From positions 124,001-188,000 of the IMG/VR virus record IMGVR_UViG_3300033143_006101: a DNA stretch of 64,000 nt; one strand, given 5' to 3'. Of this stretch, positions 13,366-50,622 are shown in pieces (the stretch's first letter is position 1; each line of letters begins with the position of its first letter). The translations under genes and the position numbers were made by a program. The notes below the pieces were generated by a model. It had not been told where the DNA came from. It saw nothing but the letters and a program-made list of their open reading frames with translations, and did not search any database.

Positions 13366-16300
13366 TTACATCTTTCTTTTATTTAGATTAGGTAACACAT
13401 TCTTTCTAACAACTATCGTTTCTCCAAAGACACCTTCTCCACTTATAGACATACCACCGAGAGGAGCCTGCCCCCATATTGCACCATGAGGATTATGCTC
13501 TGCTTGTTGCATTACTTCATACGCAGAAGCAATAGATTTTATTGTAGGTAATGAAATTTTGTGCGGTAGAATATGCTGCCCATGTACAGTCTGTCGTATA
13601 TAATCTTCATAACAAAACCAACACACACGACATACAGCATCAGCATAGTCTTTAGAACCTTGTGGTGGGTGATCCAATCTCTTTCCTTTTATTAACGTCA
13701 ATTGTTTTAACTCATGTATCAATGTTTCATAATCAGGGCATTGCTTGGGCAATTCTATTTGCCCTTGATATATAAGTTGTTTTAAAACCTCATACATTTC
13801 TAAATTAGCCCCAACTTGTTCTACATAAATACCCTCAGAAAAAAGTCTTTGTATAGACTCTACACTACTCCATCTATCATATCCAACTTTCCCTACATTA
13901 AAATTATCACATATTAATTTAATAACTTCTTCTACATTACTAAAAGATACCGTTATTCTATTCTCTGGATCCGGAGCCCATCCAGTTATAAGATCTATTA
14001 CAACTTTTAATCTTACAGATTCTTTATCTACCCCATCCTTTTCTCCTACTTTAACAGGAGATTCTTCTATATGTCCCATAGCTAACGTAAAATGGTCACG
14101 TTTCTCGCCCTGGTCCACACAAACATAATATTTATTTATCTGATCCTGTGCTAAAGGCAGTGCTTTCTTACCTATATAAATCCTAAATACTATACCTTCA
14201 TCAGTCTGCAGTTGTTCTTCGATCATTTTCTCTGAGAAAAGAACTAATGCATCTCCTTCTGTTAGTACCTTATCTATTCTTTCAGGAAATTCAAAGAAAG
14301 GATTGATTGTTGCCGGAGGTATAGCTAAATAGTCACGTCGATATGTCTCGGGATTTTGTATTCTTTCACTTTCAAAGTCTTCTCCCTCAATAAAACCACT
14401 AGGATTAGCTTCTGTTTTAGGACTCAACTCAAAAGTAGTTGCATGCATACCATATAAATTAGGTACCTTTCTATCCATCTTTTCACGCATAGCACCTACT
14501 ACTACAGACTGTGCTCCTACGTAACAGGTACCAGACATGGCTAATAGTTGCATAGTATAATCGTCTTCAAACATGGGAGAGGAAATAACTACTATCTTAC
14601 TTACTTTCTTAAGGTTAGATACTGATCTAGATACAGTGGAATAAACCGCATTAGCAGAACGAGTCTGAGACTTGGCAGCAACAGCTCCTTCTACTACATC
14701 AAAACGACTAAGCTCATCCAATACTACACAATAACTTGTCTTACCAGCCAACGCAGAAGAGTTAGAGTGCAGGGATAACATAGCCAATCGTCTTTCCGGA
14801 AATTCCACAGCTTGTTTAAGCCTTTGGAATAGTGTATGCTTTCCCTCATTGGCTTCTCTCTCTTTTAAGTACGCGAAATACTTTACCCACCAATTCTTCT
14901 TATCAATAATACTTTCTATATGAGCAAATACAGTTTCTTTAGCCTGGATTTCAGAAGAGGCTATACATTGTCCAGTTAATCTTGATGGCTCTAAACCAAA
15001 TTCTACTGCCGGATCCGGGAACTGTAACATATACTGTGTCATATATGTCATAATTACAGCTGCAATATAAGAATTGTGTGTTACTGTACCATCAGCTAAA
15101 CAAAATAAATTATCTTTATCTACTCCAATCCCCGCATATTCTCCCTCACCAATCGATTCTACTTTAATAGAAGATAAATAATTTTCCCTATTGGACTGTT
15201 TCCCATTGTGTATATACTGTTTATATTTAATCTTGCAAGGTATCTCCCATACATCTCCATATATTGAGATTCTCCATGTAGTTCCCTCATAACCTTCAAC
15301 TTGACATGTTGTTTTCTTTTTCTGTATATGAGTTCTATATCCAAGTGTATCAGCTAATCTTTTCACATCATTAGCTAATTGTTCATTAGATAATGCTATA
15401 TCATAACCATGCCTATCAGCTCGATGATGCCCATCAGTATCTATAATTCCTGCCAATACCTCCAATCTAATTTCCTTACTATTTGAAATATAACATTGGG
15501 GAATATGTTTATTACTAACAAGACTTAATTTTTTAAACTCTTCCCACAAGGGGTTTAATAACCCAGAAGTTTTACATAAACGATAATTAGCAGATTTATT
15601 ATTTCTTTTATCTGATATGGAAAGCTTTAAGTTATTCTTAGCACAATAATCTTCTAACCACTGCACTATTTCAATATCCGCTGATGTAATAATGGGTTGT
15701 TTAGAAAAACCATCTCCAAGCCAAACTCCTATCAAATAAGGATCAATAGGAACAGGTTGTTCTGAAAAAGTAATTAATCCAGCTTTATATCCTCTAAAAA
15801 AATATTTCCACTTATCCGATTTCTTTAAATAATCTTTTATAGAAATATTAACAACATCAGGCTCATTCGGATATCTTCCATTTGGTTGTCGATTAGACCT
15901 ATCATCTCTAGCAGACTGAGTTTTTTTTAGTGAAAGAATATGATATTCGTTTACTGTATAATTATCTGCTTGAGATTGATGTATCTCAAACAATTCAGAT
16001 GCCCCCCGCGAAGTTTCTAACACAGTCCGTGAAATAGAATCTGGACCCATAACCAAATCACCTACTTTAATATCTTTAGCCTTTTTTAATGTCCCATCAA
16101 ACATTAAAATATTCTGGTCAATTTGGACACATTTACCTCCACGCATACCGGCACACAGAACACCCTGATCAAACTTATTCTTATCTCCTACTTTAGAAAA
16201 TAACTCCTCTAAAAACTTTCTTTGCAGAGCTCGTAGTTTAATCCCTAAATATTCTTTGGATTCAGCATACTCAATGATGTCAGCTGTATGCTTTACTGGG

Positions 16301-16407
16301 CATTTCACTATCTTTTTAGCAAAATAAGGAGTTTCTATAGTAGAATGTGCTGTGTCTTGTGGGATATAATTAGAATTTAATAATTTATCACCTAAACCCA
16401 TAATCAC
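13366..16407 (-). CDS. terL: terminase large subunit, intein-containing
   Basis: Walker A GMRGGK|S split by intein; Walker B VVLDE; C-terminal nuclease 'CVDQG...D', 'YDRW', 'DHPPQGSKDYADA'. Confidence 0.88.
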   Translation of the reverse strand: MIMGLGDKLLNSNYIPQDTAHSTIETPYFAKKIVKCPVKHTADIIEYAESKEYLGIKLRALQRKFLEELFSKVGDKNKFDQGVLCAGMRGGKCVQIDQNILMFDGTLKKAKDIKVGDLVMGPDSISRTVLETSRGASELFEIHQSQADNYTVNEYHILSLKKTQSARDDRSNRQPNGRYPNEPDVVNISIKDYLKKSDKWKYFFRGYKAGLITFSEQPVPIDPYLIGVWLGDGFSKQPIITSADIEIVQWLEDYCAKNNLKLSISDKRNNKSANYRLCKTSGLLNPLWEEFKKLSLVSNKHIPQCYISNSKEIRLEVLAGIIDTDGHHRADRHGYDIALSNEQLANDVKRLADTLGYRTHIQKKKTTCQVEGYEGTTWRISIYGDVWEIPCKIKYKQYIHNGKQSNRENYLSSIKVESIGEGEYAGIGVDKDNLFCLADGTVTHNSYIAAVIMTYMTQYMLQFPDPAVEFGLEPSRLTGQCIASSEIQAKETVFAHIESIIDKKNWWVKYFAYLKEREANEGKHTLFQRLKQAVEFPERRLAMLSLHSNSSALAGKTSYCVVLDELSRFDVVEGAVAAKSQTRSANAVYSTVSRSVSNLKKVSKIVVISSPMFEDDYTMQLLAMSGTCYVGAQSVVVGAMREKMDRKVPNLYGMHATTFELSPKTEANPSGFIEGEDFESERIQNPETYRRDYLAIPPATINPFFEFPERIDKVLTEGDALVLFSEKMIEEQLQTDEGIVFRIYIGKKALPLAQDQINKYYVCVDQGEKRDHFTLAMGHIEESPVKVGEKDGVDKESVRLKVVIDLITGWAPDPENRITVSFSNVEEVIKLICDNFNVGKVGYDRWSSVESIQRLFSEGIYVEQVGANLEMYEVLKQLIYQGQIELPKQCPDYETLIHELKQLTLIKGKRLDHPPQGSKDYADAVCRVCWFCYEDYIRQTVHGQHILPHKISLPTIKSIASAYEVMQQAEHNPHGAIWGQAPLGGMSISGEGVFGETIVVRKNVLPNLNKRKM
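15073..16131 (-). mobile_element. intein (353 aa) with LAGLIDADG homing endonuclease
   Basis: starts CVQIDQ, ends VTHN followed by Ser; 'GVWLGDG' and 'LAGIIDTDG' blocks. Confidence 0.95.
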
Positions 16408-25218: not shown

Positions 25219-25444
25219 CTACCTTTACACTTATATTAATTTCTAAAACAAATAAGTATACAACTATCTGGATTAACTTATTTTTTGGTTCAGATTTATC
25301 TAGTTTAAATATGTCTCTTCCTTCTATATGTATTCCTAAACCAAGGAAAGAAGGTTCATACTCAACTCCTATTCTTACCGCACCAATATGTTTTGTCCAA
25401 AGCTGATGAGACTCTCTTGTAGTTGCTAATTTTTCCTTTTTCAT
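25169..25444 (-). CDS. hypothetical protein
   Basis: ORF in operon. Confidence 0.5.
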   Translation of the reverse strand: MKKEKLATTRESHQLWTKHIGAVRIGVEYEPSFLGLGIHIEGRDIFKLDKSEPKNKLIQIVVYLFVLEINISVKVGEADEQKKNKKDIKKA

Positions 25445-26817
25445 TATGCTACTCCTTGCATATCACTATATAATTCCCCTACAAATTTAGGGTTCTCTCT
25501 AAAAAATGTATTAAGCTTTTCCTTACCCTGAAATTTTTCTCCTTTAACAACATACCATGTGCCAGCCTTCTGAATCTTCCCAGCATTTATTCCAAGTGCA
25601 ACTATTTCAGCTGTATGATCTATCTGCCCTGTCTGAAATGTACTACCATCTTTAAAATAATAATCTATTTCATGCAAGTCAGCTGGGGCTGCAAGTTTAC
25701 TCTTCTCGGTTCGTAATCGTATACGTTGTCCATGATAGGTAAGAGCAATTTCTTTCCCTGCACTCCCATCTTCCTTTAGATAAGTCAGCTTATGAAATTC
25801 TAAAGCTAATGAGATCAGATGGGCAACAGCATGTCCTCCAGAATATGTGGGGGCTGACTTAATAAACCCCAATGTACTACGAACTTGTGAGTTAATAAAC
25901 AGAGCTGGCCTAAAAGATTCTGACTCATCCTCTATATTCTCAGCGGCATAAGCACTACATACATACCTGACCATCAAAGCATTAGCCTTTGGTTCAGCAC
26001 CCATAGTAGCCTCATCTGACTCCCTATTCTTAACATATTTAGGAACAGCAGCCTGTAGACTATCCAATATAATAGCATCTATTTCCTTACTTTTTATAAT
26101 CTCCCTCATATATTCCGTGGCTTCCTCTGTATCAGTAGGATCACTAACAATGAGTTCTTTAGTAATAACTCCACATTTCATAAGATAATCTGGAGTACTC
26201 ATATGCTCTCGTTTATTCTCTGTTATTTTTACAGTTTTTAACCATGCCTCAGTACCCACCATCCAATCCTGTTGTTTTTTAGTTAATTTTTCTTTCTCTT
26301 GTAACTCTGCTAATGTAGTTGTCTTATCATTGTAATCTAATTCGTTAATCTTCTCTCCTGTCTGTGCATTAGTAAAACTTTGAACAGTAATTATCCTGGG
26401 TGTTTCTATCCCCAATGTTTTCTCAAAGTCTATCATACAAAATCTTCTAGGAACAAAGATATTGTCTTTACATTGACATACAGGAATTCTTAAAATGTCC
26501 CTGAGTACTACAGTCCATCTATCAGCATTGTCATCTACTGGAATATCTGGACGAATACCATGACACACTCTACATATCCTTTGGTTATACGCCATCATTT
26601 GATAGAGGGAAGCATTCTTTCCTGAAGACTTTGCTCCAAATAATAAATGGATCCTTCTGTAAACATATCCACCACCTATCATTGCATCTATAGAAAAAGA
26701 ACCAGAAAAGAATCTTTTCATTCTAAATGCTTTAGCTTTATCCAAAGTACTAAGTTTAGTGTTACCTCTATCTTTATTAATCTTCTGGATTATATTAGGT
26801 AATTCAAACTCTTTCAT
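25444..26817 (-). CDS. recA: RecA-family recombinase with insertions
   Basis: SGSFSIDAMIGGG, GAKSSGK, IILDS, INSQVR, SGGHA, IQKAGTWY, KFQGKE. Confidence 0.88.
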   Translation of the reverse strand: MKEFELPNIIQKINKDRGNTKLSTLDKAKAFRMKRFFSGSFSIDAMIGGGYVYRRIHLLFGAKSSGKNASLYQMMAYNQRICRVCHGIRPDIPVDDNADRWTVVLRDILRIPVCQCKDNIFVPRRFCMIDFEKTLGIETPRIITVQSFTNAQTGEKINELDYNDKTTTLAELQEKEKLTKKQQDWMVGTEAWLKTVKITENKREHMSTPDYLMKCGVITKELIVSDPTDTEEATEYMREIIKSKEIDAIILDSLQAAVPKYVKNRESDEATMGAEPKANALMVRYVCSAYAAENIEDESESFRPALFINSQVRSTLGFIKSAPTYSGGHAVAHLISLALEFHKLTYLKEDGSAGKEIALTYHGQRIRLRTEKSKLAAPADLHEIDYYFKDGSTFQTGQIDHTAEIVALGINAGKIQKAGTWYVVKGEKFQGKEKLNTFFRENPKFVGELYSDMQGVA

Positions 26818-28822: not shown

Positions 28823-31402
28823 CTATTTTGTCCATTTATCCAAAACCTCCAAATCTGCCTTCAAACCTATTTCTATATCAGGTATATCTTCAATAAGACT
28901 TTTAACTAACTGAGCACCAACTATCCCAACTTCATGCTCAGGGCAATCAACTAAGATACAATCATGAACAACACCTACAATCTTTGCTAATTTATTCGTA
29001 CTATCTATCCATTTCTGTAATCTTATTAAACCAAAATTTGTAATGTCACTTGCGGTTGCTTGGATGGGCATATTTGTTGCTTGACGAAGAGCCCCTTCCC
29101 TAACTTTAGTATCAGTACTATACACCTTAGATAAATATCGACGACGACCATGTGCACTTTCTACATAACCATATTCTATAGCAAATCTTTCAACAGCCTT
29201 AAGCCACTGCTTTGCTCCACTATATAAATTAAACCAGCTGTCGATAAACTTCTGTGCTTTTGAGGTACTCTCATGTCTTTCAATAGATGTGTCCATAGGG
29301 TACCCAAGTTGTGTAGCTAAAGAAAATGCGGATAACCCGTACACAATTCCGAAGTTAATCGTTTTTGCTATTGTCCTAGCTTTCATATGCTTTTCATTAT
29401 TCTTATCAAATTGTTCATAAGAAATATGAAGAAGAGCATTACAAGCTGTTGCAGCATGAATATCATGATCAGCTTTAAATGCTTTAATCATTTCCACATC
29501 ACCAGAGAACATTGCCAATACTCTAAGCTCTGCCTGCCCTAAATCTGCAGCCAAAAGTTTATTACCAGGAGCAGGAATAATCATATTACGTATCCTATTA
29601 TCTCTTGGTACTGTTTGAAGCGGAGGATTAATACAGCTAAGTCTTCCAGTTGCAGTAGTATGTTGTAAGTAACCCGGGTATACTCTTTGAGTATTTGGAT
29701 CCATAAGATCCAAAAACCCATCTATATAAGTCGAGGTCTGTTTATTTATTTTCCTATACTCTAAGATATTTGCAAGTTCGGGATAGGTTTCGGCATAATA
29801 CTTTATTGCAGCTTCATTAAGAGAAGGATCTCCTTTAGGAGTTTTAAACTTATCACTTTTCGTAATCTTTAATTTATTAAAAACAAATTTTCTTAATTGT
29901 GGTGCAGAATTTATATCAAATTGCCCTCCATTTCTTGCATATATTAATTCCTCTATTTCTGCAGCTCTACTGTTATTCTCTTTTTTGACTTTCTCCATAT
30001 GAGCAACATCTATACGTATCCCATTTTCCTCTATACGAAGTAAAGTATTAGCTAAAGGCATTATCAGATGATAAAATAAATTATTATATGTTTTACCAAT
30101 CTCAGCAACCTGTTGTTGATAGATACGAAATGTTACATCAGAATCTAACGCAGAGTAATAAGGTACCGGTGGTAATCCACTCCTCTTTAACCTTGCCTGT
30201 TTCTTGTCTTCCACATACATTGCATAATTATCAAACTCAGTTCTTTCAATAGGTGCATCCTTTTTCTTCTTAGTCTTTTGTTTCTTTTGTGTAGCAACAA
30301 TACCTCCTTCACCCAGAATATCTTCATAACCACCAAGAGGAGTATGTGTCCAAGCCATGGTCTTTAGCTTATAAAGACCTATAACCTCTCTACCCTCATA
30401 ACTCATTGTTGTAGTGTGTTCAGCATACAGCGTATCAAAACCAAAATTATTAATAGTTAAACCAACTGCTCTTAAGAACTTCACATCAAACACACCATTA
30501 TGAAATACTTTAACAATACTTGGATGACTTAGTATTTGATTTAACAAATCAAAAAATGGAAGTATATCCTCCCATTTAATATGTACTCCTTTACCTGATT
30601 CAATACAAAAAGAAATGTGTGTGATTCTATTCTCCCTTGGATTCAATCCATCAGTTTCTATATCCATTGCTATTAAAGAAGAATCCAGTAACCGATTAAG
30701 ATATGCTTTAATTTCTATTGGATCAGACAGTGATACAGGAGTAGCTTCAAGCAATCTTGTCTTAGGTTCATATGCCAATTTCCTGGCCATTAATATATCT
30801 TCTTCAAACTGTTGATATATCAATGCATCTTGCCGATAGCCTAAATACATGGGGTGATAAGTTGTTACTATAGTACATTCTAATTCTGGATGATAGAATT
30901 GTTTACCGCGTGCAATGGTCATAGCTAAACCTAGACCAAGCATTTGATCCATAGCTGTTTTTCCTAACGTAAGTATTACTTTAGGTTTTATTTCATCGAT
31001 AAGTTTATAAGTAAAAGTACGACAGCATTTAATTTGGGTAGGAGTAGGTTTTTTATTTTTACCTTCTTTATCAGTAGGTCTGCATTTAACAGAATTAGTT
31101 ATAAAACAATCTATATTGTGTTGATTTAATTTATTTTGAAGGATACTACCAGCTTTCCCTATAAAAACATTCCCATCTTTATCTTCATTAGCTCCCGGGG
31201 CTTCACCAACAATTAATAAAGGTGCTTCTTTATTTCCACGCCCCTCAATATAGGGAGTCTTTACTCGTTTATATAACCCACATTTTTTACAGTATGCATT
31301 ACTAAACAACTCACTCAACATCTGTTCACGTACACTTAATCTAATACCTGTCGGAACAGATCTAACCGCCTTTATATCAATCATAATGCTCTCCAAAGTC
31401 AT
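28823..31402 (-). CDS. polA: family A DNA polymerase with N-terminal family-4 uracil-DNA glycosylase domain
   Basis: VGEAPGANED, NSVKCRP, TYHP (UDG4); DIETDG, FHNGVFD (exonuclease); TATGRLS, DLGQAELR, RTIAKTINFGIVYG, VHD (polymerase). Confidence 0.95.
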   Translation of the reverse strand: MTLESIMIDIKAVRSVPTGIRLSVREQMLSELFSNAYCKKCGLYKRVKTPYIEGRGNKEAPLLIVGEAPGANEDKDGNVFIGKAGSILQNKLNQHNIDCFITNSVKCRPTDKEGKNKKPTPTQIKCCRTFTYKLIDEIKPKVILTLGKTAMDQMLGLGLAMTIARGKQFYHPELECTIVTTYHPMYLGYRQDALIYQQFEEDILMARKLAYEPKTRLLEATPVSLSDPIEIKAYLNRLLDSSLIAMDIETDGLNPRENRITHISFCIESGKGVHIKWEDILPFFDLLNQILSHPSIVKVFHNGVFDVKFLRAVGLTINNFGFDTLYAEHTTTMSYEGREVIGLYKLKTMAWTHTPLGGYEDILGEGGIVATQKKQKTKKKKDAPIERTEFDNYAMYVEDKKQARLKRSGLPPVPYYSALDSDVTFRIYQQQVAEIGKTYNNLFYHLIMPLANTLLRIEENGIRIDVAHMEKVKKENNSRAAEIEELIYARNGGQFDINSAPQLRKFVFNKLKITKSDKFKTPKGDPSLNEAAIKYYAETYPELANILEYRKINKQTSTYIDGFLDLMDPNTQRVYPGYLQHTTATGRLSCINPPLQTVPRDNRIRNMIIPAPGNKLLAADLGQAELRVLAMFSGDVEMIKAFKADHDIHAATACNALLHISYEQFDKNNEKHMKARTIAKTINFGIVYGLSAFSLATQLGYPMDTSIERHESTSKAQKFIDSWFNLYSGAKQWLKAVERFAIEYGYVESAHGRRRYLSKVYSTDTKVREGALRQATNMPIQATASDITNFGLIRLQKWIDSTNKLAKIVGVVHDCILVDCPEHEVGIVGAQLVKSLIEDIPDIEIGLKADLEVLDKWTK

Positions 31403-42964: not shown

Positions 42965-44617
42965 TTATTTTAATTTTATAGACTCATACCACCGTGGGAG
43001 TTCAAGAAGAGGAGTACCCATAATGTCATCAATTATAGACATTGCTCCCCTCATAGCATCCCGTACTGCTTGAGCTACTAAAGCACTTTCAGTTAATGTA
43101 TTAGGATCCACTCTACTAACAGGTATTCCTACAGCTTCGAGAGAATCAGATAGCCTTTCTCTACGAGTAGTAATTGTTCCTGGTGGAAACATTATTACCA
43201 CTGCAGCTTTAGGGCGACCAAGCCCCTTCTCATCACAGTTTTCAACTATTTGTCTGATAACACCAGTATTGTGATCTTCATCTGTAAGATAAATATCAAT
43301 TTCACAATTTAATTTACGAGCATCTTCATACCATGACAAACAATTTGTTCCATGACCACCACAATGAATACCATACAACCTTGCCATGAATGCATCCTTT
43401 TCAAATGTTTCAGGTAGATCTAACTCCCTCTTATCATCATCAAATAATCCCCAATGAAAATTCTCTTCTGGATTCTTAATGCATTCTGCTATAATAGAAC
43501 CACGTTCCTTAGCAAAGTTAATTGCATGCATCATAGAAGGGCTTGCATCTATATGAACAAACACTTTACCAAGATCACCTACAATTTCTTTTCTTTTGTC
43601 AGCACGAGCTTTCTTAAGTTCTTTACTAACATCTGCATCTACTTCAGTAGTAATTTTATCTACACGATCTAAAGCAGTCTTAGCAGTTTTAATCTTCTCT
43701 GTAAAGACTTCCATTATTTCCTTATCTTTAAGCAAACCTTCTTTATCAAAAAGTTCACGATAAATAACTGCTTGATCACCACTACATTGTTCAAGTACTG
43801 CAGCTGCAATAACTGGCGATATCTTTTTATTCAAAGCACCCAGTACACCCTGAGGTTTTAACTTCTCCTCACGGATCTTTTCTGCTATTGCAAGATCACT
43901 AAGCCCCTTGAAATTAAAGATTTCACTTTTCTCCGCAACTCTTCCGTCCTTTTGATCCCATCCAAACACAGCAACGGCTTCATCAGAAGGAGCTATATGC
44001 AAAGCCCTATACATATTCAACATAATCTTAGTAAAAGCTGCTTTTTTAATTCCTTCCAAAGCTTTTGGATTCTGTTCACGAAAACGAATATACTTCTTAC
44101 ATGCATTTTTAAGACTACGAGCGAAGTGTGTACCTTCTTTATACCTTGCACCAAGTGGCATCTTGAGATTTGCTATCGTAATCAAACGAGACACTAACTT
44201 TGGATCCATAGTTAATACAGCAGCCTGGGCAACTCTACGATAATTAGGTTTTTTATAATCACTGCCTTCTGAGAAAGGTGTACCATCTGCATCACTCAAA
44301 GAATTGATAAATGTAGATAGAACTTTTAAATCCTTTCCATCAGATTTAGTTATAGCCCAGCTGTTAAAATGAGCTAAAAAGACAGGATCTTGATCAGCAA
44401 GAGTTATAAAAGTATCAAGTATAGGTTGTAACCTTTGCTCTTGTACTTCAGGCACTTCTGTTATAGTCCCATCTGGATTACGCCGTTTTCTCATAATAGT
44501 CTGTCCATTCTGCAGGGTGTTCTTAGACCATACATGTGTACATCCACTGATAATTGTTTTATAAACATCTAAACGAGTTTCGTCGTTCAGATAAGCGAGT
44601 TGATTCTCTTGTGCCAT
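42965..44617 (-). CDS. Ro60/Rsr-like TROVE-vWA RNA-binding protein
   Basis: helical N-terminus with 'DPVFLAH', 'RSLKNA', 'RALHIAP'; C-terminal vWA MIDAS DASPS...T...TD; Y-RNA-like gene directly upstream. Confidence 0.7.
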   Translation of the reverse strand: MAQENQLAYLNDETRLDVYKTIISGCTHVWSKNTLQNGQTIMRKRRNPDGTITEVPEVQEQRLQPILDTFITLADQDPVFLAHFNSWAITKSDGKDLKVLSTFINSLSDADGTPFSEGSDYKKPNYRRVAQAAVLTMDPKLVSRLITIANLKMPLGARYKEGTHFARSLKNACKKYIRFREQNPKALEGIKKAAFTKIMLNMYRALHIAPSDEAVAVFGWDQKDGRVAEKSEIFNFKGLSDLAIAEKIREEKLKPQGVLGALNKKISPVIAAAVLEQCSGDQAVIYRELFDKEGLLKDKEIMEVFTEKIKTAKTALDRVDKITTEVDADVSKELKKARADKRKEIVGDLGKVFVHIDASPSMMHAINFAKERGSIIAECIKNPEENFHWGLFDDDKRELDLPETFEKDAFMARLYGIHCGGHGTNCLSWYEDARKLNCEIDIYLTDEDHNTGVIRQIVENCDEKGLGRPKAAVVIMFPPGTITTRRERLSDSLEAVGIPVSRVDPNTLTESALVAQAVRDAMRGAMSIIDDIMGTPLLELPRWYESIKLK

Positions 44618-44645: not shown

Positions 44646-44780
44646 ATGGCAGTTCAAGTTGTAAAAATAGTTTTTTCAGTCCTCAAAACTGATGCTCTAC
44701 CCAACTGAGCTAATTACCGAATGGTTGGTAATGAGAGATTTGAACTCTCGGCTTGTATATTCTTACGATGGAACTGCCAT
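44646..44780 (-). ncRNA. Y RNA-like 1: bulged-C stem enclosing a circularly permuted tRNA (T arm, closed acceptor, D arm, anticodon arm)
   Basis: AUGGCAGUUC(C)A/UGAACUGCCAU; gagag-UUCAAAU-cucuc; auuacc-aaccauuc-gguaau; UAGCUCAGUUGGGUAGAGC; ucagu-uuugagg-acuga. Confidence 0.85.
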
Positions 44781-44787
44781 ATATAAA

Positions 44788-45078
44788 TCATCCTGCTTCA
44801 CTATTAGGTATTACATAGATATTGTGTCTATCTTCAGCTCTATGAATCTTATATATCCAACCAGTCCTATCATCCTTTATGTCTTTATCAAATACTTCAA
44901 CAAGCACCGGGCGAATTGTCTCAAGAATTTCTTCATCCGTAGAATCAAAAGAAAGCCCCAAATCACTAAGATCCCTTTGATAATCCTGTCTTTGAATAGG
45001 TACAATAAGCTTGTTACGAGCACCATCATCAAGAGGCGTAAGCTCTATTGTTGCAGGAACATTATTTTCAGTTGTCAT
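44788..45078 (-). CDS. putative ubiquitin-like (beta-grasp) protein
   Basis: 96 aa, beta-beta-alpha-beta-beta pattern, ends IYVIPNSEAG; near E1 and JAB genes. Confidence 0.55.
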   Translation of the reverse strand: MTTENNVPATIELTPLDDGARNKLIVPIQRQDYQRDLSDLGLSFDSTDEEILETIRPVLVEVFDKDIKDDRTGWIYKIHRAEDRHNIYVIPNSEAG

Positions 45079-45665: not shown

Positions 45666-46703
45666 TTACTCCTTATCTTTTTTTTGAAATATTCCTTTTA
45701 TCTTATCCATTGTTTGTTGTATAATTAGCTTACCTAAAAATAATTTATTCAATAATCTAGTCGCTCTATCCTCTTCTACCATAAGATTTTTATAATTGCT
45801 ACGATTTGTACCCTCAAGTCGTTGATTCCTGTCTTTAGCATCCTTAATTATCTCCTTCATTAACTTGTTATCCATCTCAGGTATACGATCTAATTCATAT
45901 AAAGGATCTTCTGTCTTAACTACTTCTAGGAATTTATCAAGAGTCAAATCACAATGTTCATCAATCCAATCCATAATAAAATAGAGACGATCATGTAAAT
46001 ATTCTTGAACACCAAATAAAATTGGATCCTTTTCCTTAATTTTCTTCTTAGTTGTTTTTACTTCTTTCTCTAGTTTCTTTCCAGTAGCCTTTTCTTGTTC
46101 CTTTTCTTCTTTAGTTTGTACCTTACCTTTATGATCCCCATATAATATTAAATAAGTATCAAACAAATTTAATTGCTTAAAATTTTTCAATGCCTTCTGT
46201 ACTTTTGCAGGCAATACTCTCGGATAATCTTCAAGTTTATCCAACTTAACTTCAACATCACGAACATTATGCATGAATCTTTCAACTACAGCTCTATCAA
46301 TTATATATTCTATACCACAAGCTAAAATCTCTGATTCTCTAACAGTAACTGCTAATTGAAAAGCAAACTCCTCATACAATGCCTGTTGTCCACTAAACTT
46401 GGCTTGCATTACCAGTGCTTTTAACTTCTCTAGTCGTTCTTGGAGTCTGACTTGCTGAAGTTTTGTAAGTTTACTTTTTACAAATTTAAAATAAAATTTT
46501 AAAGGAGCTTTTCTACTCTTAGGATACCTGCCATTTCGAATAGCGTGTATTTCGGAATCGCTGGCACCGGATGAAGGGGCAAATGGTTCGTAAACATTAC
46601 TACCCCATTCAAGACCACTTGCCGTGTGTATTTCAATATTAATAGGTGATGTGTCTATAGTACCAAAAGTACTTATATTAGCAGTATTATATATTCTAGA
46701 CAT
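45666..46703 (-). CDS. hypothetical protein
   Basis: 345-aa ORF with AGGAGGAGG RBS; 'KDPILFG...RLYFIMDW'. Confidence 0.7.
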   Translation of the reverse strand: MSRIYNTANISTFGTIDTSPINIEIHTASGLEWGSNVYEPFAPSSGASDSEIHAIRNGRYPKSRKAPLKFYFKFVKSKLTKLQQVRLQERLEKLKALVMQAKFSGQQALYEEFAFQLAVTVRESEILACGIEYIIDRAVVERFMHNVRDVEVKLDKLEDYPRVLPAKVQKALKNFKQLNLFDTYLILYGDHKGKVQTKEEKEQEKATGKKLEKEVKTTKKKIKEKDPILFGVQEYLHDRLYFIMDWIDEHCDLTLDKFLEVVKTEDPLYELDRIPEMDNKLMKEIIKDAKDRNQRLEGTNRSNYKNLMVEEDRATRLLNKLFLGKLIIQQTMDKIKGIFQKKDKE

Positions 46704-47260: not shown

Positions 47261-47945
47261 GGAAACTTCCTCCTTAATATTAAACATGTTATAATAATAA
47301 AAACAATTAATAACCCATAACCAATAAATGTATATAACATTGTTGGCTCAGCACTAGAAAATAAAATAAATACAATAGCTGCACCTAAAATAGAACCATA
47401 AAAAAACAATCCAATTATTTCAATTTTTCTCATAGCCATTATTGAAATCATCTTGTATCTCTCTTATTTCTTTACCTAATCCTTTCATGAAGGATCCACC
47501 ACCAGATTTAGAAATTGTAGTGCATCCTTTAGTAAGCATTGAAATTATTACAACATAGCATAATATAATTAAAATCATACCTGCTAATGCAAAACCCTAT
47601 AATTTTATTCATTTTTCTTCAATCTCCTCCACATGGTTCCATTTAACCAAAACAAGATCAAAAAATTTATCACGTTCTTCTTCTGTATGAAAAACACAGT
47701 CGATCAAATCACGAACACGACATATAGGTTTGCCCCTTTGCCTGATAGCAACATCATCACATGAAAACCATACCGCAGGGGGTTTTTCTTCCTTCGATAT
47801 GCTTGATGAGTCTAACCAAACGGAAACGCCTTTTAGAATTGATTCGGTATTAGGTAAGATCTTATCCAGATCTATAGCTCAATTAAGACATTCTACAATA
47901 TGCATCTCCAAGTAACCTCAAACTAATACAACTATTTATTTTTTA

Positions 47946-48087
47946 ACAGTAGTTCAAGTTGGTATATTTAAGCTGGATCAGTGGTAAGCCCGTATAACCC
48001 CAGGCCCCTGGGCTTTTAGTCCTTGCGAGACTACGTTGCTATAAACAACGCTTTTGTGCTTGTAAAATATACCTGTGGAACTACTGC
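47946..48087 (-). ncRNA. Y RNA-like 2: bulged-C stem enclosing a three-hairpin non-tRNA domain
   Basis: GCAGUAGUUC(C)A/UGAACUACUGU; ggUAUAUUU/AAAUAUAcc; UACAAGC motif. Confidence 0.75.
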
Positions 48088-48099
48088 AAATTTTCATTT

Positions 48100-48153
48100 C
48101 TAACTGTCCTAATAGGGAGGTCACGGAGGTCCTACAATAATTAGGACAGTTAG
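48100..48153 (-). ncRNA. hairpin RNA with 14-bp stem and two GACCUCC motifs in loop
   Basis: cuaacuguccuaau/auuaggacaguuag, located between Y2 and Y3. Confidence 0.45.
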
Positions 48154-48156
48154 AGT

Positions 48157-48232
48157 ATAGGGAGTCCAAGTTTATATTACACGTCAAGTAACCCGAAGAT
48201 AACTTGTAGGTAACATATATGAAACTCCCTAT
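48157..48232 (-). ncRNA. Y RNA-like 3: minimal 76-nt form
   Basis: AUAGGGAGUUU(C)A/UGGACUCCCUAU; UACAAG motif; AACUU 3' internal loop; abuts tRNA-Met 3' end. Confidence 0.7.
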
Positions 48233-48308
48233 TTGCAGGAGAGAGATTCGAACTCCCGTATGACCTTGGTTATGAGCCAAGCGACCTAGCCAGCTGGTCT
48301 ATCCTGCA
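48233..48308 (-). tRNA. tRNA with CAT anticodon (Met, or Ile2)
   Basis: TGCAGGA/TCCTGCA acceptor, cttgg-CTCATAA-ccaag, GTTCGAATC T-loop; CCA not encoded. Confidence 0.88.
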
Positions 48309-48596
48309 TTATTCCTTATTCCTTTTCTTCTTCCTTTTCTCTGCTTCTGAATCTGGCATTGCATCATGACATTTCTTACAATATACATCACACTTCTTAA
48401 TCTCTCTCAAAAATCTGTCAGGTGCCCAAGACCATATTCTATGATCTACTTTTTTACCAGGTTCTCTATGGTGAAGAGAAAGATTTTTTGTTGTGCCACA
48501 TCCTTTGCACTTCTTACCTTTATAAAACCTTTCCCTTCTTTTACGTAACCATTCTTTTTGATAGCTTTTTAAATCTTCCTTGTCTTTGTAGGGCAT
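48309..48596 (-). CDS. small HNH endonuclease
   Basis: CKGCG..NLSLHH...KCDVYCKKCH; inserted within the RNA cluster. Confidence 0.8.
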   Translation of the reverse strand: MPYKDKEDLKSYQKEWLRKRRERFYKGKKCKGCGTTKNLSLHHREPGKKVDHRIWSWAPDRFLREIKKCDVYCKKCHDAMPDSEAEKRKKKRNKE

Positions 48597-48603
48597 TAGT
48601 TTA

Positions 48604-48804
48604 TTAAGTCACACGAACCGCTACTGCTCGTGGTCCTTTATCTCCTTGCTCAGTATCAAATTCCACTGCATCTCCTTCATTTAATGTTTTAAATCCAGTA
48701 CCTTCAATACTACTATGATGTACAAAAATATCATTTCCATCATCATCTGTAATAAAACCAAAACCTTTTTTCTCGTTAAACCATTTTACTTTACCTTGCG
48801 ACAT
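48604..48804 (-). CDS. cspA: cold-shock domain protein
   Basis: [34 protein letters not shown]. Confidence 0.95.
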
Positions 48805-48853
48805 ATTTTTACCTCTATTGCTTAAATTCAACCCGTTGAATCCAACTGGTTAT

Positions 48854-48989
48854 TCGGGGAAGAAGGAGTTGAACCTTCGACATTCAGTTTCCAAATGCTT
48901 GTAAGATAATATTATGGGAACCTAAAAGGTTCAAGTTATACCATCTAGAAAACAACACACTGAGACTCTACCTACTGAGCTATTCCCCG
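48854..48989 (-). ncRNA. Y RNA-like 4: tRNA-Pro-like body with 63-nt Y module inserted in the anticodon loop
   Basis: CGGGGAA/UUCCCCG-A acceptor, D and T arms intact; insert 48896-48958 contains AACUUGAACC-uuuu-aGGUUCC and UACAAGC; UUUGGAA precedes the 3' anticodon strand. Confidence 0.8.
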
Positions 48990-48997
48990 TTTATTTT

Positions 48998-49128
48998 AAA
49001 GGAGTTCAAGTAATAGTTGCAATTAGTTTGCAAGTGAAAGATTTGAACTTTCGACCTAAAGTTTAATAGACTTTTGCTCTACCAACTGAGCTAATTTGCT
49101 TGTAAGCAACTATATAGGAAACTCCTTT
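48998..49128 (-). ncRNA. Y RNA-like 5: Y stem enclosing a complete unpermuted tRNA-like cloverleaf (49028-49100, anticodon ATT)
   Basis: AAAGGAGUUUCC/UGAACUCCUUU; auaguugc/gcaacuau; UAGCUCAGUUGGUAGAGC; aaagu-CUAUUAA-acuuu; gaaag-UUCAAAU-cuuuc. Confidence 0.8.
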
Positions 49129-49154
49129 AATTTTCCTTAAAAATATAAAATTAA

Positions 49155-49356: not shown

Positions 49357-49385
49357 AATATAATCAAGATACATAATATTGTCAA
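49357..49385 (-). promoter_or_regulatory. sigma70-type promoter heading the RHH / Y RNA / cspA unit
   Basis: TTGACA-17 bp-TATATT. Confidence 0.75.
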
Positions 49386-49415
49386 CAATTTTTTTAAAAA
49401 AATTACTAAAAGTGA

Positions 49416-49457
49416 TCCTGGGTAGTATATATATATATATATATATACTACCCAGGA
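49416..49457. repeat. perfect 42-bp palindrome with (TA)11 core
   Basis: tcctgggtag-(ta)11-ctacccagga. Confidence 0.9.
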
Positions 49458-49465
49458 CAACATTT

Positions 49466-50622
49466 TTACTTGCGGTACAGCGTCAGTTGAATCACTTCGT
49501 CTTTGAATTCTACAGCTTCACCGCGTAACAGTTTGCCATTCTTACCTTCTTCTTGAACTTCCCTAATCTCAATGATTTTAAAAGGAAGTTTTTGAGTCTC
49601 TCCGAAGATCACTTTCTCTTCAAATTTACAACCTAACTCCTTACCTATGAGTTTTTTTTTATCATCTCAGGTTTAAATTCAAAGATATTAGCCTCTTCTT
49701 TCTTTAGATAACTACTACCTTCTTTGGCAACTACATCTTCCTTTACTGCATTCCAAGAAGCAGGGAGATCATACACATCTACTCCCCTTATTTTATTCTC
49801 ATGAAGAAAAATAGCACCAACCTGATTCTCGATTGGTGGGATCTTCTTCATTACTTCTTTGATAAAAGCAGTCATGTCATCTAAAGCATCCACTAAGTCA
49901 TCAGACGCAGGAATATCCTCTATGTTCTCATCTGATGACTTGGATATTCTATTACGCCCTATTGGTGGTAGTCCAGATGGTCCACATGAACCAGCTACCC
50001 CAACAGGAGCAGCGTCCACCTCATCTGAACTTGAATCCTCTGAAGAATCACATAATGTAGGCAATACTTCATTGTCCATATCACTTATATTACATGAAAA
50101 AGATCTTCGAACAGGATTATGCTTATAAGACTTGATACGATCACCTCTACCAGTCTGTGCAAGATAGACTGCATTGTGATTGCTAACAGAATCCCAAGTA
50201 CTTCCTTGGCTAGAGAGATCTACGTCGAAGGGTGCTCGTCCACTATATTTCATCTCTGCCCCTTTTTGAGTCGGTTTAGATTGATGCACACAGTGAACAT
50301 TAATGCGAGTACTCTTACCAGGCATGATAAGGTAACTATGAATAGCAACCCGTTCCTGGGCTTTACCTCTGAAGAGTTCACCTCTACTAATAAATACAGG
50401 CGTGCCCTCATTGTTCTGAACATAAAGATAGTTTACCTGTCCGGTATCTTCTACCTTAATATCCTATGCCTCAGCAAACGTAATGTATTTACGTTTCTTT
50501 TTTGACTTCCTTGTTATTGGCACGATAACGTTTAGTGATTCCTCACTCATTCTCCAAGCCTCGCCCAAGACGAATCCATTCTTCTCGCTTGAAACGGACT
50601 TGATAAATTGTTGTATTGATAT
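49466..50622 (-). pseudogene. ARPP-1/DUF6569-like protein, disrupted
   Basis: 'YITFAEA*DIKVEDTGQVNYL..N....VFI..GELFRGKAQER...INVHCV'; in-frame TAG at 50464-50466, frameshift in A9 run at ~49655, ATA at the expected start. Confidence 0.6.

What the first reader, a model, noticed from the sequence alone, without database searches (positions are those of the whole stretch)
47946..48232. Y2 and Y3: same module with a non-tRNA multi-hairpin domain, and a minimal version abutting tRNA-Met
Seen: Y2 encloses three short hairpins closed by AAGC/GCUU and has no T- or D-loop consensus. Y3 carries only a caagu/acuug hairpin and begins at the nucleotide after the tRNA-Met discriminator. Inference: tRNA 3'-end processing would create the Y3 5' end, so the polycistronic transcript is punctuated by tRNA processing. 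Y2 may recruit a different effector.
Basis: partly seen in the sequence, partly recalled or inferred. Interest (0 to 1): 0.6.

Follow-up and report, generated by a model that had tools for sequence, protein, structure and literature searches.

The report
Phage Y-RNA-like small RNAs beside tRNA
Y2 and Y3 are two small structured RNAs in a jumbo phage that share their closing stem with at least six other RNAs of the same phage, one of them a tRNA-mimicking Y RNA next to a very divergent Ro60-like gene. They are most likely extra Y RNAs for that protein: a known kind of system in an unusually modular form.

Summary
All features lie on the minus strand.

- **Y3** (48232..48157) starts at the base after the discriminator of tRNA-Met (48308..48233). 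It is a long bulged stem capped by a CAAGU/ACUUG helix with a UUCG loop.
- **Y2** (48087..47946) has the same terminal stem around three hairpins. It has no T- or D-loop and gives no tRNA hit.

The shared module is: outer helix, then a 5' Y-C-A / 3' AACUUG internal loop, then an 8-9 bp helix, then UACAAGC. It occurs 8 times in this 253-kb phage, against 0 in 100 simulated genomes. About 30 further copies lie in eight related phage contigs, with compensatory changes at every stem position.

One copy in the window (44780..44646) is a YrlA-type tRNA-like Y RNA. It sits directly upstream of a 550-aa ORF that no Pfam model recognises, yet the ORF's predicted fold matches Ro60 over its full length. 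A profile of its family hits only human Ro60 among PDB sequences.

Y2 and Y3 are best read as non-tRNA Y RNA paralogues, like YrlB and Yrn2. They would be co-transcribed with tRNAs and probably released by tRNA processing. Modules start within 2 nt of a preceding tRNA-like 3' end in four related contigs as well.

Binding, RNA ends and effector choice remain untested, because no RNA data could be found.

The parts
48157..48232 (-). Y3: minimal Y-like RNA. It has a 10-11 bp outer helix, an internal loop (5' UCAUA / 3' AACUUG), an 8-9 bp inner helix, then CUACAAGU and an apical CAAGU/ACUUG helix with a UUCG loop.
   Evidence: Fold z = -4.4. Module parse. Starts at the base after the tRNA-Met discriminator.
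47946..48087 (-). Y2: the same terminal module (outer GCAGUAGUU/AACUACUGU, loop CCACA/AACUUG, inner GGUAUAUU/AAUAUACC, UUACAAGC). It encloses an 89-nt domain of three hairpins closed by AAGC/GCUU.
   Evidence: Folds. No T-loop and no Rfam or tRNA hit. The interior has no sequence relative in the genome or in the related loci.
48099..48154 (-). Spacer hairpin between Y3 and Y2: a 15-bp perfect stem with a 25-nt loop that holds GACCUCC twice. It is not a copy of the module.
   Evidence: Fold z = -4.5. No relatives found.
48233..48308 (-). tRNA-Met(CAU), with no encoded CCA. Its discriminator A48233 directly precedes Y3, and its 5' end directly follows the stop codon of the HNH ORF.
   Evidence: ARAGORN. 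Rfam tRNA hit of 55.7 bits.
48997..49129 (-). Y1: the same module closed around a complete cloverleaf tRNA-like domain (ARAGORN 'Asn AUU', 49100..49028).
48854..48989 (-). tRNA-like RNA whose anticodon loop is replaced by a 68-nt insert. The insert carries the module in hairpin (circularly permuted) form, at 48946..48897.
   Evidence: Rfam tRNA hit of 49 bits with a 68-nt insert. Fold z = -3.5. Alignment A2.
44646..44780 (-). YrlA-type Y RNA with the same terminal module, enclosing a T-arm, a closed acceptor-like stem, a D-arm and an anticodon-like arm. It lies 28 nt upstream of the Ro60-like ORF.
   Evidence: Rfam YrlA RF02553 scores 29.1 bits (gathering score 69), E = 3e-5 to 9e-5, over the full model length. 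Sequence.
42965..44617 (-). Ro60-like protein of 550 aa: a helical ring domain plus a vWA domain with the MIDAS motif D357-x-S359-x-S361. It is the presumed partner of the module.
   Evidence: No Pfam or PHROG hit and no TROVE hit in the genome. The AF2 model (pLDDT 84) has Ro60 structures as its top 13 PDB matches, over the full length, with E 1e-8 to 4e-6. The family profile hits only human Ro60, E = 2.9e-6. Five of 40 relatives hit PF25045 vWA_Ro60 below threshold.
49357..49385 (-). Promoter-like site (TTGACA-17-TATATT, 11 of 12 matches) upstream of the RNA array, preceded by a terminator-like palindrome at 49458..49415.
   Evidence: This is a consensus match only.

Best explanation
Y2 and Y3 are non-tRNA members of a phage family of Y-RNA-like small RNAs.

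Each is closed by the same bipartite stem. I infer this stem is the docking site for the phage's own divergent Ro60-like ring protein (ORF 42965..44617).

The variable apical part would set what else the RNP contacts, or whether the RNA merely occupies or gates the protein. That part is three hairpins in Y2 and one UUCG hairpin in Y3.

The RNAs lie in a tightly packed minus-strand array: RHH ORF, Y1, a permuted tRNA-like Y RNA, csp, HNH, tRNA-Met, Y3, hairpin, Y2. The array is probably transcribed from the promoter-like site near 49370. Individual RNAs would be cut out by the tRNA-processing enzymes. An RNase Z-type cut after the tRNA-Met discriminator would leave Y3 with its 5' end at 48232.

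**Shown:** the structures, the family, the covariation, the Ro60 fold of the neighbouring protein, and the YrlA-like RNA with the same stem.

**Inferred:** protein binding, co-transcription, cleavage sites and effector choice.

**My estimates:** real structured RNAs of one family, about 0.9. Bound by the Ro60-like protein, about 0.6. Y3 5' end made by tRNA 3' processing, about 0.5.
For: 1. **Module statistics.** Seven strict hits in the genome against 0 in 100 simulated genomes.

2. **Covariation.** Measured in 37 curated copies from 9 phage contigs.
   - Every stem position shows 4 or more pair types.
   - True partners pair at 7.65 of 8 inner positions, against 3.68 for cross-partners.
   - Outer positions 7-10 were not used for detection. 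They pair at 2.81 against 1.74 of 4.
   - RNAalifold on 17 hairpin-form copies finds compensatory changes in 13 of 13 pairs.
   - There are 33 G-U pairs against 2 A-C mismatches in the inner helix, which fixes the strand.

3. **Link to a recognisable Y RNA.** The same stem closes a YrlA-type RNA just upstream of the Ro60-like ORF, here and in relatives L042, L039 and L044. The Rfam YrlA consensus has the same ACUUG on the 3' strand next to its terminal helix.

4. **The partner is Ro60-like.**

5. **Non-tRNA versions recur near the Ro60-like gene.** Examples are L029 1468-1561, 1708-1812 and 2111-2196, L030 7727-7819 and 7834-7957, and L046 7537-7607.

6. **Abutment recurs.** The spacer from the preceding discriminator is 0 nt for Y3, -1 in L029, 1 in L042, -1 in L044 and 2 in L031.

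7. **Precedent.** Bacteria carry two or more Y RNAs, one tRNA-like and one a long hairpin, processed from one precursor, with RNase P cleavage in M. smegmatis (PMC4201824). Thermus phage phiLo has Ro60 plus two upstream Yrls (PMC12135203).
Against: - No RNA or binding data exist. No sequencing run was listed.
- Y2 and Y3 give no Rfam hit. The conserved 5'-strand motif of known Y RNAs (GNCGAA / GGUCCGA) is absent; the phage has GUU-Y-C-A instead.
- Y2 and Y3 lie 3.3 kb from the Ro60-like gene. A transposase-like ORF and other ORFs lie between them.
- Three further copies sit 70 kb away in the main tRNA cluster.
- Six more distant Ro60-like loci showed no module in their flanks (L032, L034-L038).
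- Y2's interior is not conserved in any relative, so its specific role has no comparative support.
Confidence: 0.55

Rival explanations
1. Y3 is not released. It stays as a structured 3' trailer on pre-tRNA-Met. This would be a third topology of tRNA-Y chimera, beside 'stem around tRNA' (Y1) and 'stem inside tRNA' (48989..48854). It would bring the Ro60-like protein, and any nuclease the protein tethers, to the tRNA for trimming, quality control or protection.
For: Zero-nt spacing between tRNA-Met and Y3. The phage and its relatives repeatedly fuse the module to tRNA bodies in other topologies. The same abutment occurs in L029 and L044.
Against: A CCA-less tRNA must lose its trailer to be charged. 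Free-standing modules with no tRNA upstream also exist: Y2, L046 7537-7607 and L029 2111-2196.
Confidence: 0.15
2. The module is a Ro-independent processing or stability element of phage tRNA operons, for example a site for RNase III, RNase E or another phage factor. Y2 and Y3 would then be by-products, or stable spacers like the small stable RNAs of the T4 tRNA cluster.
For: Three copies lie in the main tRNA cluster, far from the Ro60-like gene. The elements are packed between tRNAs. The known Ro-binding 5' motif is missing.
Against: All eleven related loci found to carry the module were fetched through the Ro60-like gene, and in most of them it lies within about 2 kb of that gene. None of 114 unrelated viral loci had a true copy or the gene. 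The architecture and the ACUUG motif match the YrlA terminal stem. Single-stranded motifs such as UACAAGC and the loop C are conserved more strictly than a mere cleavage hairpin would need.
Confidence: 0.15
3. The repeats act at the DNA level, as a miniature mobile element or as homing or recombination sites linked to the nearby HNH and transposase-like genes, and not as RNA.
For: An HNH ORF (48596..48309) and a transposase-like ORF (46703..45666) are nearby. The copies are dispersed.
Against: Stem sequences differ completely between copies while pairing is kept. G-U pairs outnumber A-C mismatches 33 to 2, so one strand is read as RNA. The copies are embedded in tRNA-like folds.
Confidence: 0.03

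Closest known systems
Bacterial Y RNAs YrlA / YrlB and Yrn1 / Yrn2 with Rsr (Ro60); Rfam RF02553; Chen et al. 2014, PMC4201824
   Same: Several Y RNAs are encoded by one Ro60 locus: one tRNA-like, and others long hairpins without a full tRNA domain. In both cases the 5' and 3' ends form a stem interrupted by an internal loop, with ACUUG on the 3' strand beside the terminal helix (Rfam consensus). [quoted passage not shown]
   Different: The 5'-strand GNCGAA motif is absent. A strictly conserved UACAAGC follows the inner helix. Rfam scores are below threshold (29 against 69 bits for the YrlA-like copy, nothing for Y2 or Y3). The partner protein is not recognised by the TROVE HMM. The module also occurs inside and around otherwise complete tRNA folds.
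Thermus phage phiLo Ro60 with Yrl1 / Yrl2 (PMC12135203); Ro60 and YrlA in mycobacteriophages, CcrColossus and Bacillus phage G (PMC4201824, PMC7824862)
   Same: A phage-encoded Ro60 with two or more Y-like RNAs nearby. phiLo Ro60 structures are among the top structural matches of the 550-aa protein (9kop and 9l5y).
   Different: Those RNAs carry the CGAA motif and lie directly upstream of the gene. Here there are at least 8 RNAs in four architectures, tRNAs are interleaved, and sequence identity to any solved Ro60 is about 14%.
Metazoan Y RNAs / Ro60
   Same: A terminal helix with an unpaired pyrimidine. The 3' strand contains CUUGA(C), as recalled from human Y RNA sequences; this comes from memory and was not tested here. 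The variable apical module is thought to choose partners.
   Different: There is no La-type U tail, the 5'-strand sequence differs, and the RNAs sit in a tRNA operon.
Small stable RNAs (species 1 and 2) in the phage T4 tRNA gene cluster (own knowledge, not checked here)
   Same: Non-tRNA structured RNAs co-transcribed with CCA-less phage tRNAs and released by host tRNA-processing enzymes.
   Different: They are not known to share a stem module or to be linked to a Ro60 protein.

Membership tests
Y RNA (Ro60-associated ncRNA, broad sense) | The 5' and 3' ends pair into a long stem interrupted by an internal loop or bulge | tested here: met
   Folds. Covariation in both helices.
Y RNA (Ro60-associated ncRNA, broad sense) | Encoded next to a Ro60 orthologue | tested here: met
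   Y2 and Y3 lie 3.3-3.6 kb upstream of the Ro60-like ORF on the same strand. Class-mates lie within 0.1-2 kb of it in L029, L030, L039, L042, L044 and L046.
Y RNA (Ro60-associated ncRNA, broad sense) | Physically bound and stabilised by Ro60 | not testable with these tools
   No RNA-protein prediction tool or RNA data were available. No sequencing runs were listed.
Y RNA (Ro60-associated ncRNA, broad sense) | Conserved 5'-strand motif GNCGAAN0-1G (bacteria) or GGUCCGA (animals) | tested here: not met
   The 5' strand reads GUU-(C/U)-C-A-Y in 35 of 35 curated copies. Motif definition from PMC4201824.
YrlA (Rfam RF02553) | Score at or above the gathering threshold, with a tRNA-like T-arm, acceptor and D-arm core | tested here: not met
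   Y2 and Y3 give no hit even at E<=10 and have no T-loop. Only the copy at 44780..44646 scores, at 29.1 of 69 bits.
tRNA | Cloverleaf recognised by ARAGORN or Rfam RF00005 | tested here: not met
   No tRNA call inside 47946..48232.
Ro60 / TROVE protein (for the presumed partner) | TROVE Pfam domain PF05731 | tested here: not met
   No hit in the protein or anywhere in the genome, while the controls did hit.
Ro60 / TROVE protein (for the presumed partner) | Ring of helical repeats plus a C-terminal vWA domain with MIDAS; full-length structural match to Ro60 | tested here: met
   Foldseek's top 13 matches are all Ro60, spanning 510-611 aligned columns at TM about 0.5. The D-x-S-x-S motif is invariant. 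The family profile hits human Ro60 at E = 2.9e-6.
Intrinsic terminator | GC-rich hairpin followed by a U run | tested here: not met
   No U tract follows Y3, the spacer hairpin or Y2. The only minus-strand terminator-like call within 47946..48308 (48241..48225) is the tRNA-Met/Y3 junction; the plus-strand calls at 47999..48012 and 48034..48050 are the reverse complements of Y2's hairpins.

The most novel reading that the evidence does not exclude
The stem is a portable Ro-docking handle that this group of uncultured jumbo phages grafts onto RNAs in at least four topologies:
- around a whole tRNA (Y1);
- in place of the anticodon loop or in the variable arm of a tRNA;
- on a YrlA-type core;
- free or appended to a tRNA 3' end (Y2 and Y3).

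Together with a Ro60 protein too divergent for current HMMs, this would be a phage system that escorts, protects or quality-controls phage tRNAs. One possible role is defence against host tRNA-cleaving systems. Y2 and Y3 would act as regulators or adaptors.
Probability: 0.25. Interest if true: 0.8.

Novelty: new variant of a known kind. Interest (0 to 1): 0.55.

Why it matters
Ro60 and Y RNAs are conserved from bacteria to humans, yet what the variable parts of Y RNAs do is still largely open.

This phage group offers a natural series of RNAs that keep one docking stem and swap everything else, including full tRNAs. It gives a direct handle on how Y-RNA modules specify partners.

It also uncovers a large family of jumbo-phage Ro60-like proteins, with at least 186 clusters in metagenomes, that current domain models miss. 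It further suggests that phage tRNA operons carry Ro-linked regulatory RNAs.

For annotation, it explains several 'tRNAs with inserts' and odd tRNA calls such as Asn-AUU as Y-RNA chimeras rather than decoding tRNAs.

Tried and rejected
- **Rfam.** Searches at gathering threshold and at E<=10 over the window, the region and the 297-nt stretch found only tRNAs. A meaningless plus-strand suhB match scored E = 5.9.
- **GenBank phages, DNA.** BLASTN of 47900-49150 found only csp and tRNA similarity, and nothing for Y2 or Y3.
- **IMG/VR pattern scans.** The strict hairpin-form pattern gave 20 hits, of which one was real; that contig (L021, the same contig as L029) also carries the Ro60-like gene.
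- **Neighbouring 191-aa ORF** as a synteny anchor: no relatives.
- **Sequencing runs.** None was listed, so read laying was not used and no transcript ends could be checked.
- **RNA-repair and processing partners in the phage genome.** No RtcB, CCA-adding enzyme or RNase PH/PNPase domain was found. One MBL-fold protein scores as Apyc1-like with only weak N-terminal RNase Z similarity, so it cannot be assigned as the processing enzyme.
- **Covariance model of the open (5'/3') form.** It was not built. MAFFT put the variable loop lengths out of register, so scripted parsing was used instead.
- **Relatives of the 550-aa protein in GenBank phages.** Only 22-24% identity, in two uncultured records.
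- **Closest relative P0003.** Its contig could not be read because the sample file was too large.

Full report
**Setting**

The window is bases 124001-188000 of a complete 252,876-bp phage record with terminal repeats and 33% G+C. It encodes jumbo-phage functions: a tubulin-like protein, DnaB, RecA, family A polymerase, HerA and 25 tRNAs. Everything in the finding lies on the minus strand.

**Checking the observation**

ARAGORN and Rfam agree on tRNA-Met(CAU) at 48308..48233, with the discriminator at 48233 and no encoded CCA.

The next base, A48232, opens a helix that closes at U48157. This is Y3, 76 nt, with:
- a 10-11 bp outer helix;
- an internal loop (5' UCAUA, 3' AACUUG);
- an 8-9 bp A/U-rich inner helix;
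- an apical CAAGU/ACUUG helix capped by C(UUCG)G.

Its fold has z = -4.4.

Y2 is 48087..47946. It has a 9-bp outer helix, the loop CCACA/AACUUG, the inner helix GGUAUAUU/AAUAUACC, then UUACAAGC. AAGC/GCUU closes three small hairpins. There is no T-loop, and no tRNA or other Rfam hit even at E<=10 in a 297-nt search.

A separate 15-bp hairpin (48154..48099) lies between the two. The 293-nt stretch folds as three independent domains, with z = -6.9.

**The module is a family, not a coincidence**

The phage genome has eight copies.
- Five lie in the window:
  - Y1 (49129..48997), closed around a full cloverleaf;
  - a tRNA-like RNA (48989..48854) whose anticodon loop is replaced by the module in hairpin form;
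  - Y3;
  - Y2;
  - a copy at 44780..44646.
- Three more lie inside tRNA-like genes at 240.7-241.4 kb.

A strict signature gives 7 hits in the real genome and none in 100 simulated genomes.

Homologues of the neighbouring 550-aa protein led to further phage contigs. Eight of these carry clusters of the same module within the scripted motif definition: L029, L030, L031, L033, L039, L042, L044 and L046. L045 carries variants with altered 3' cores.

Pairing was measured across 37 curated copies:
- Every helix position shows four or more pair types.
- True partners pair far better than cross-partners: 7.65 against 3.68 of 8 in the inner helix, and 5.68 against 2.99 of 7 at outer positions 4-10.
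- Outer positions 7-10 were not used for detection. They also pair better, at 2.81 against 1.74 of 4.

RNAalifold on 17 hairpin-form copies finds compensatory changes in all 13 predicted pairs. The first loop base pairs with the last base of CUUG/CUUA: C-G in 26 copies, U-A in 6 and U-G in 3. G-U pairs outnumber A-C mismatches 33 to 2, which fixes the transcribed strand.

**What the module belongs to**

The copy at 44780..44646 is a YrlA-type Y RNA. In order it has the stem, a T-arm, a closed acceptor-like hairpin, a D-arm, an anticodon-like arm and the stem again. Rfam YrlA aligns over its full length at 29 bits, below the gathering score of 69. The YrlA consensus printed there also carries ACUUG on the 3' strand beside its terminal helix.

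This RNA ends 28 nt before a 550-aa ORF. No Pfam, PHROG or PDB sequence search recognises the ORF, and the TROVE HMM finds nothing in the genome. Three further results point to Ro60:
- **Fold.** An AlphaFold model built from 40 homologues has pLDDT 84. Its 13 best PDB matches are all Ro60 proteins: Xenopus, human, Deinococcus Rsr and Thermus phage phiLo. They match over the full length with E 1e-8 to 4e-6.
- **Profile.** The family profile hits only human Ro60 among all PDB sequences, at E = 2.9e-6.
- **Domain.** Five of 40 relatives touch the Ro60 vWA model, and the MIDAS D-x-S-x-S motif is invariant.

The protein is therefore a highly divergent Ro60. It belongs to a family of at least 186 clusters seen only in metagenomes.

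**Where Y2 and Y3 fit**

In the relatives the module closes four kinds of RNA:
1. whole tRNAs (Y1 type);
2. YrlA-type cores;
3. hairpin-form inserts in tRNA-like genes;
4. short non-tRNA interiors of 15-69 nt: L046 7537-7607, L029 1468-1561, 1708-1812 and 2111-2196, L030 7727-7819 and 7834-7957.

Y3 (21-nt interior) and Y2 (89-nt interior) belong to the fourth class. Interiors of this class are not conserved in sequence.

This mirrors bacteria, where each Ro60 locus has a tRNA-like Y RNA plus a hairpin-type Y RNA (YrlB, Yrn2). Those RNAs are processed from one precursor and are thought to widen the range of partners (PMC4201824).

**Processing**

The array is tightly packed. The HNH stop codon is followed at once by tRNA-Met, then Y3 with no spacer, then the hairpin after 2 nt, then Y2 after 11 nt. 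A promoter-like site lies upstream at 49385..49357.

Wherever a tRNA-like T-arm precedes an open-form module in relatives, the module starts -1 to +4 nt from the predicted discriminator. The values are -1 in L029, 1 in L042, -1 in L044, and 2 and 4 in L031.

That recurrence supports the idea that tRNA 3' processing defines the Y 5' end. For CCA-less tRNAs this would be an RNase Z-type cut, which is established knowledge for such tRNAs. It remains an inference, because no sequencing run could be listed.

The phage encodes no RtcB, CCA-adding enzyme or PNPase-type domain. Its only MBL-fold protein looks Apyc1-like. Host enzymes are therefore presumably used.

**Comparison and novelty**

Phage Ro60 with Y RNAs is known in mycobacteriophages, CcrColossus, phage G and phiLo. 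The following points are different here:
- the absence of the GNCGAA motif;
- the strictly conserved UACAAGC;
- the number and modularity of the RNAs;
- their fusion with tRNA bodies in several topologies;
- the divergence of the protein.

I file Y2 and Y3 as a new variant of a known kind. They work like Y RNAs, but they fail the sequence-motif and Rfam membership tests, and binding is untested.

Noticed in passing
window 48854..48989 (-): A tRNA-like gene (Rfam tRNA 49 bits) whose anticodon loop is replaced by a 68-nt insert carrying the Y stem as a closed hairpin. In topology it is a circularly permuted YrlA: open acceptor end, closed Ro stem.
   Followed up: partly
G000 240715-241360 (+) = L001 4715-5360: Three adjacent tRNA-like genes in the main tRNA cluster carry the hairpin-form module in the variable region. 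One keeps a Ser-like UGA anticodon loop (Rfam tRNA 53 bits, L001 5076-5218). ARAGORN misses all three.
   Followed up: partly
window 48997..49129 (-), with L039 6460-6593, L042 6662-6794, L046 7628-7759 and L029 1324-1457: Y1-type RNAs enclose a complete cloverleaf. Their anticodons differ between phages (Asn-AUU, Met-CAU, Cys-GCA, Lys-CUU, Arg-ACG), so these 'tRNA' calls are probably not decoding tRNAs.
   Followed up: partly
window 48099..48154 (-): A 15-bp perfect hairpin whose 25-nt loop holds GACCUCC twice, resembling an anti-Shine-Dalgarno sequence. One copy, GACCUCCCUAU, nearly repeats the Y3 3' strand GACUCCCUAU, so it could pair with the Y3 5' strand instead. No relatives were found.
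   Followed up: partly
all module copies: The two most conserved single-stranded motifs, ACUUG (3' loop strand) and (U)ACAAG(C), are complementary over CUUG/CAAG. No explanation was found; possibilities include an alternative conformer, pairing in trans, or two separate protein contacts.
   Followed up: no
window 44788..45078 (-): A 96-aa ORF ending in ...NIYVIPNS.AG is conserved immediately upstream of the YrlA-like RNA or the Ro60-like gene in L029, L036, L037, L039, L042, L044 and L045. It has no family hit and may be a partner of the system.
   Followed up: no
window 49645..50325 (-): A 226-aa protein with an ARPP-1 domain (PF20208). An ARPP-1 protein also lies just upstream of the Ro60-like gene on the contig of the closest relative, P0003.
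   Followed up: no
window 45666..46703 (-): A transposase-like ORF (phrog_10081) lies with neighbouring small ORFs between the RNA array and the 96-aa ORF / YrlA / Ro60-like unit. In relatives these two parts are contiguous, which suggests an insertion here.
   Followed up: no
G000 232637-233518 (+) = L161 1369-2250: A 293-aa metallo-beta-lactamase-fold protein scores as anti-Pycsar Apyc1 (69 bits, above the cut-off). It has only N-terminal similarity to RNase Z models. It lies about 4 kb upstream of the main tRNA cluster.
   Followed up: partly
window 13366..16407 (-), 28823..31402 (-) and 25444..26817 (-): Three unusual replication genes: an ORF carrying an intein (Hint plus LAGLIDADG), a family A DNA polymerase fused to a uracil-DNA-glycosylase-like domain, and a RecA with a long N-terminal extension.
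   Followed up: no
window 49415..49458: A 20-bp palindrome with a long (TA)n core acts as a terminator-like hairpin on both strands, just upstream of the promoter-like site of the RNA array.
   Followed up: no
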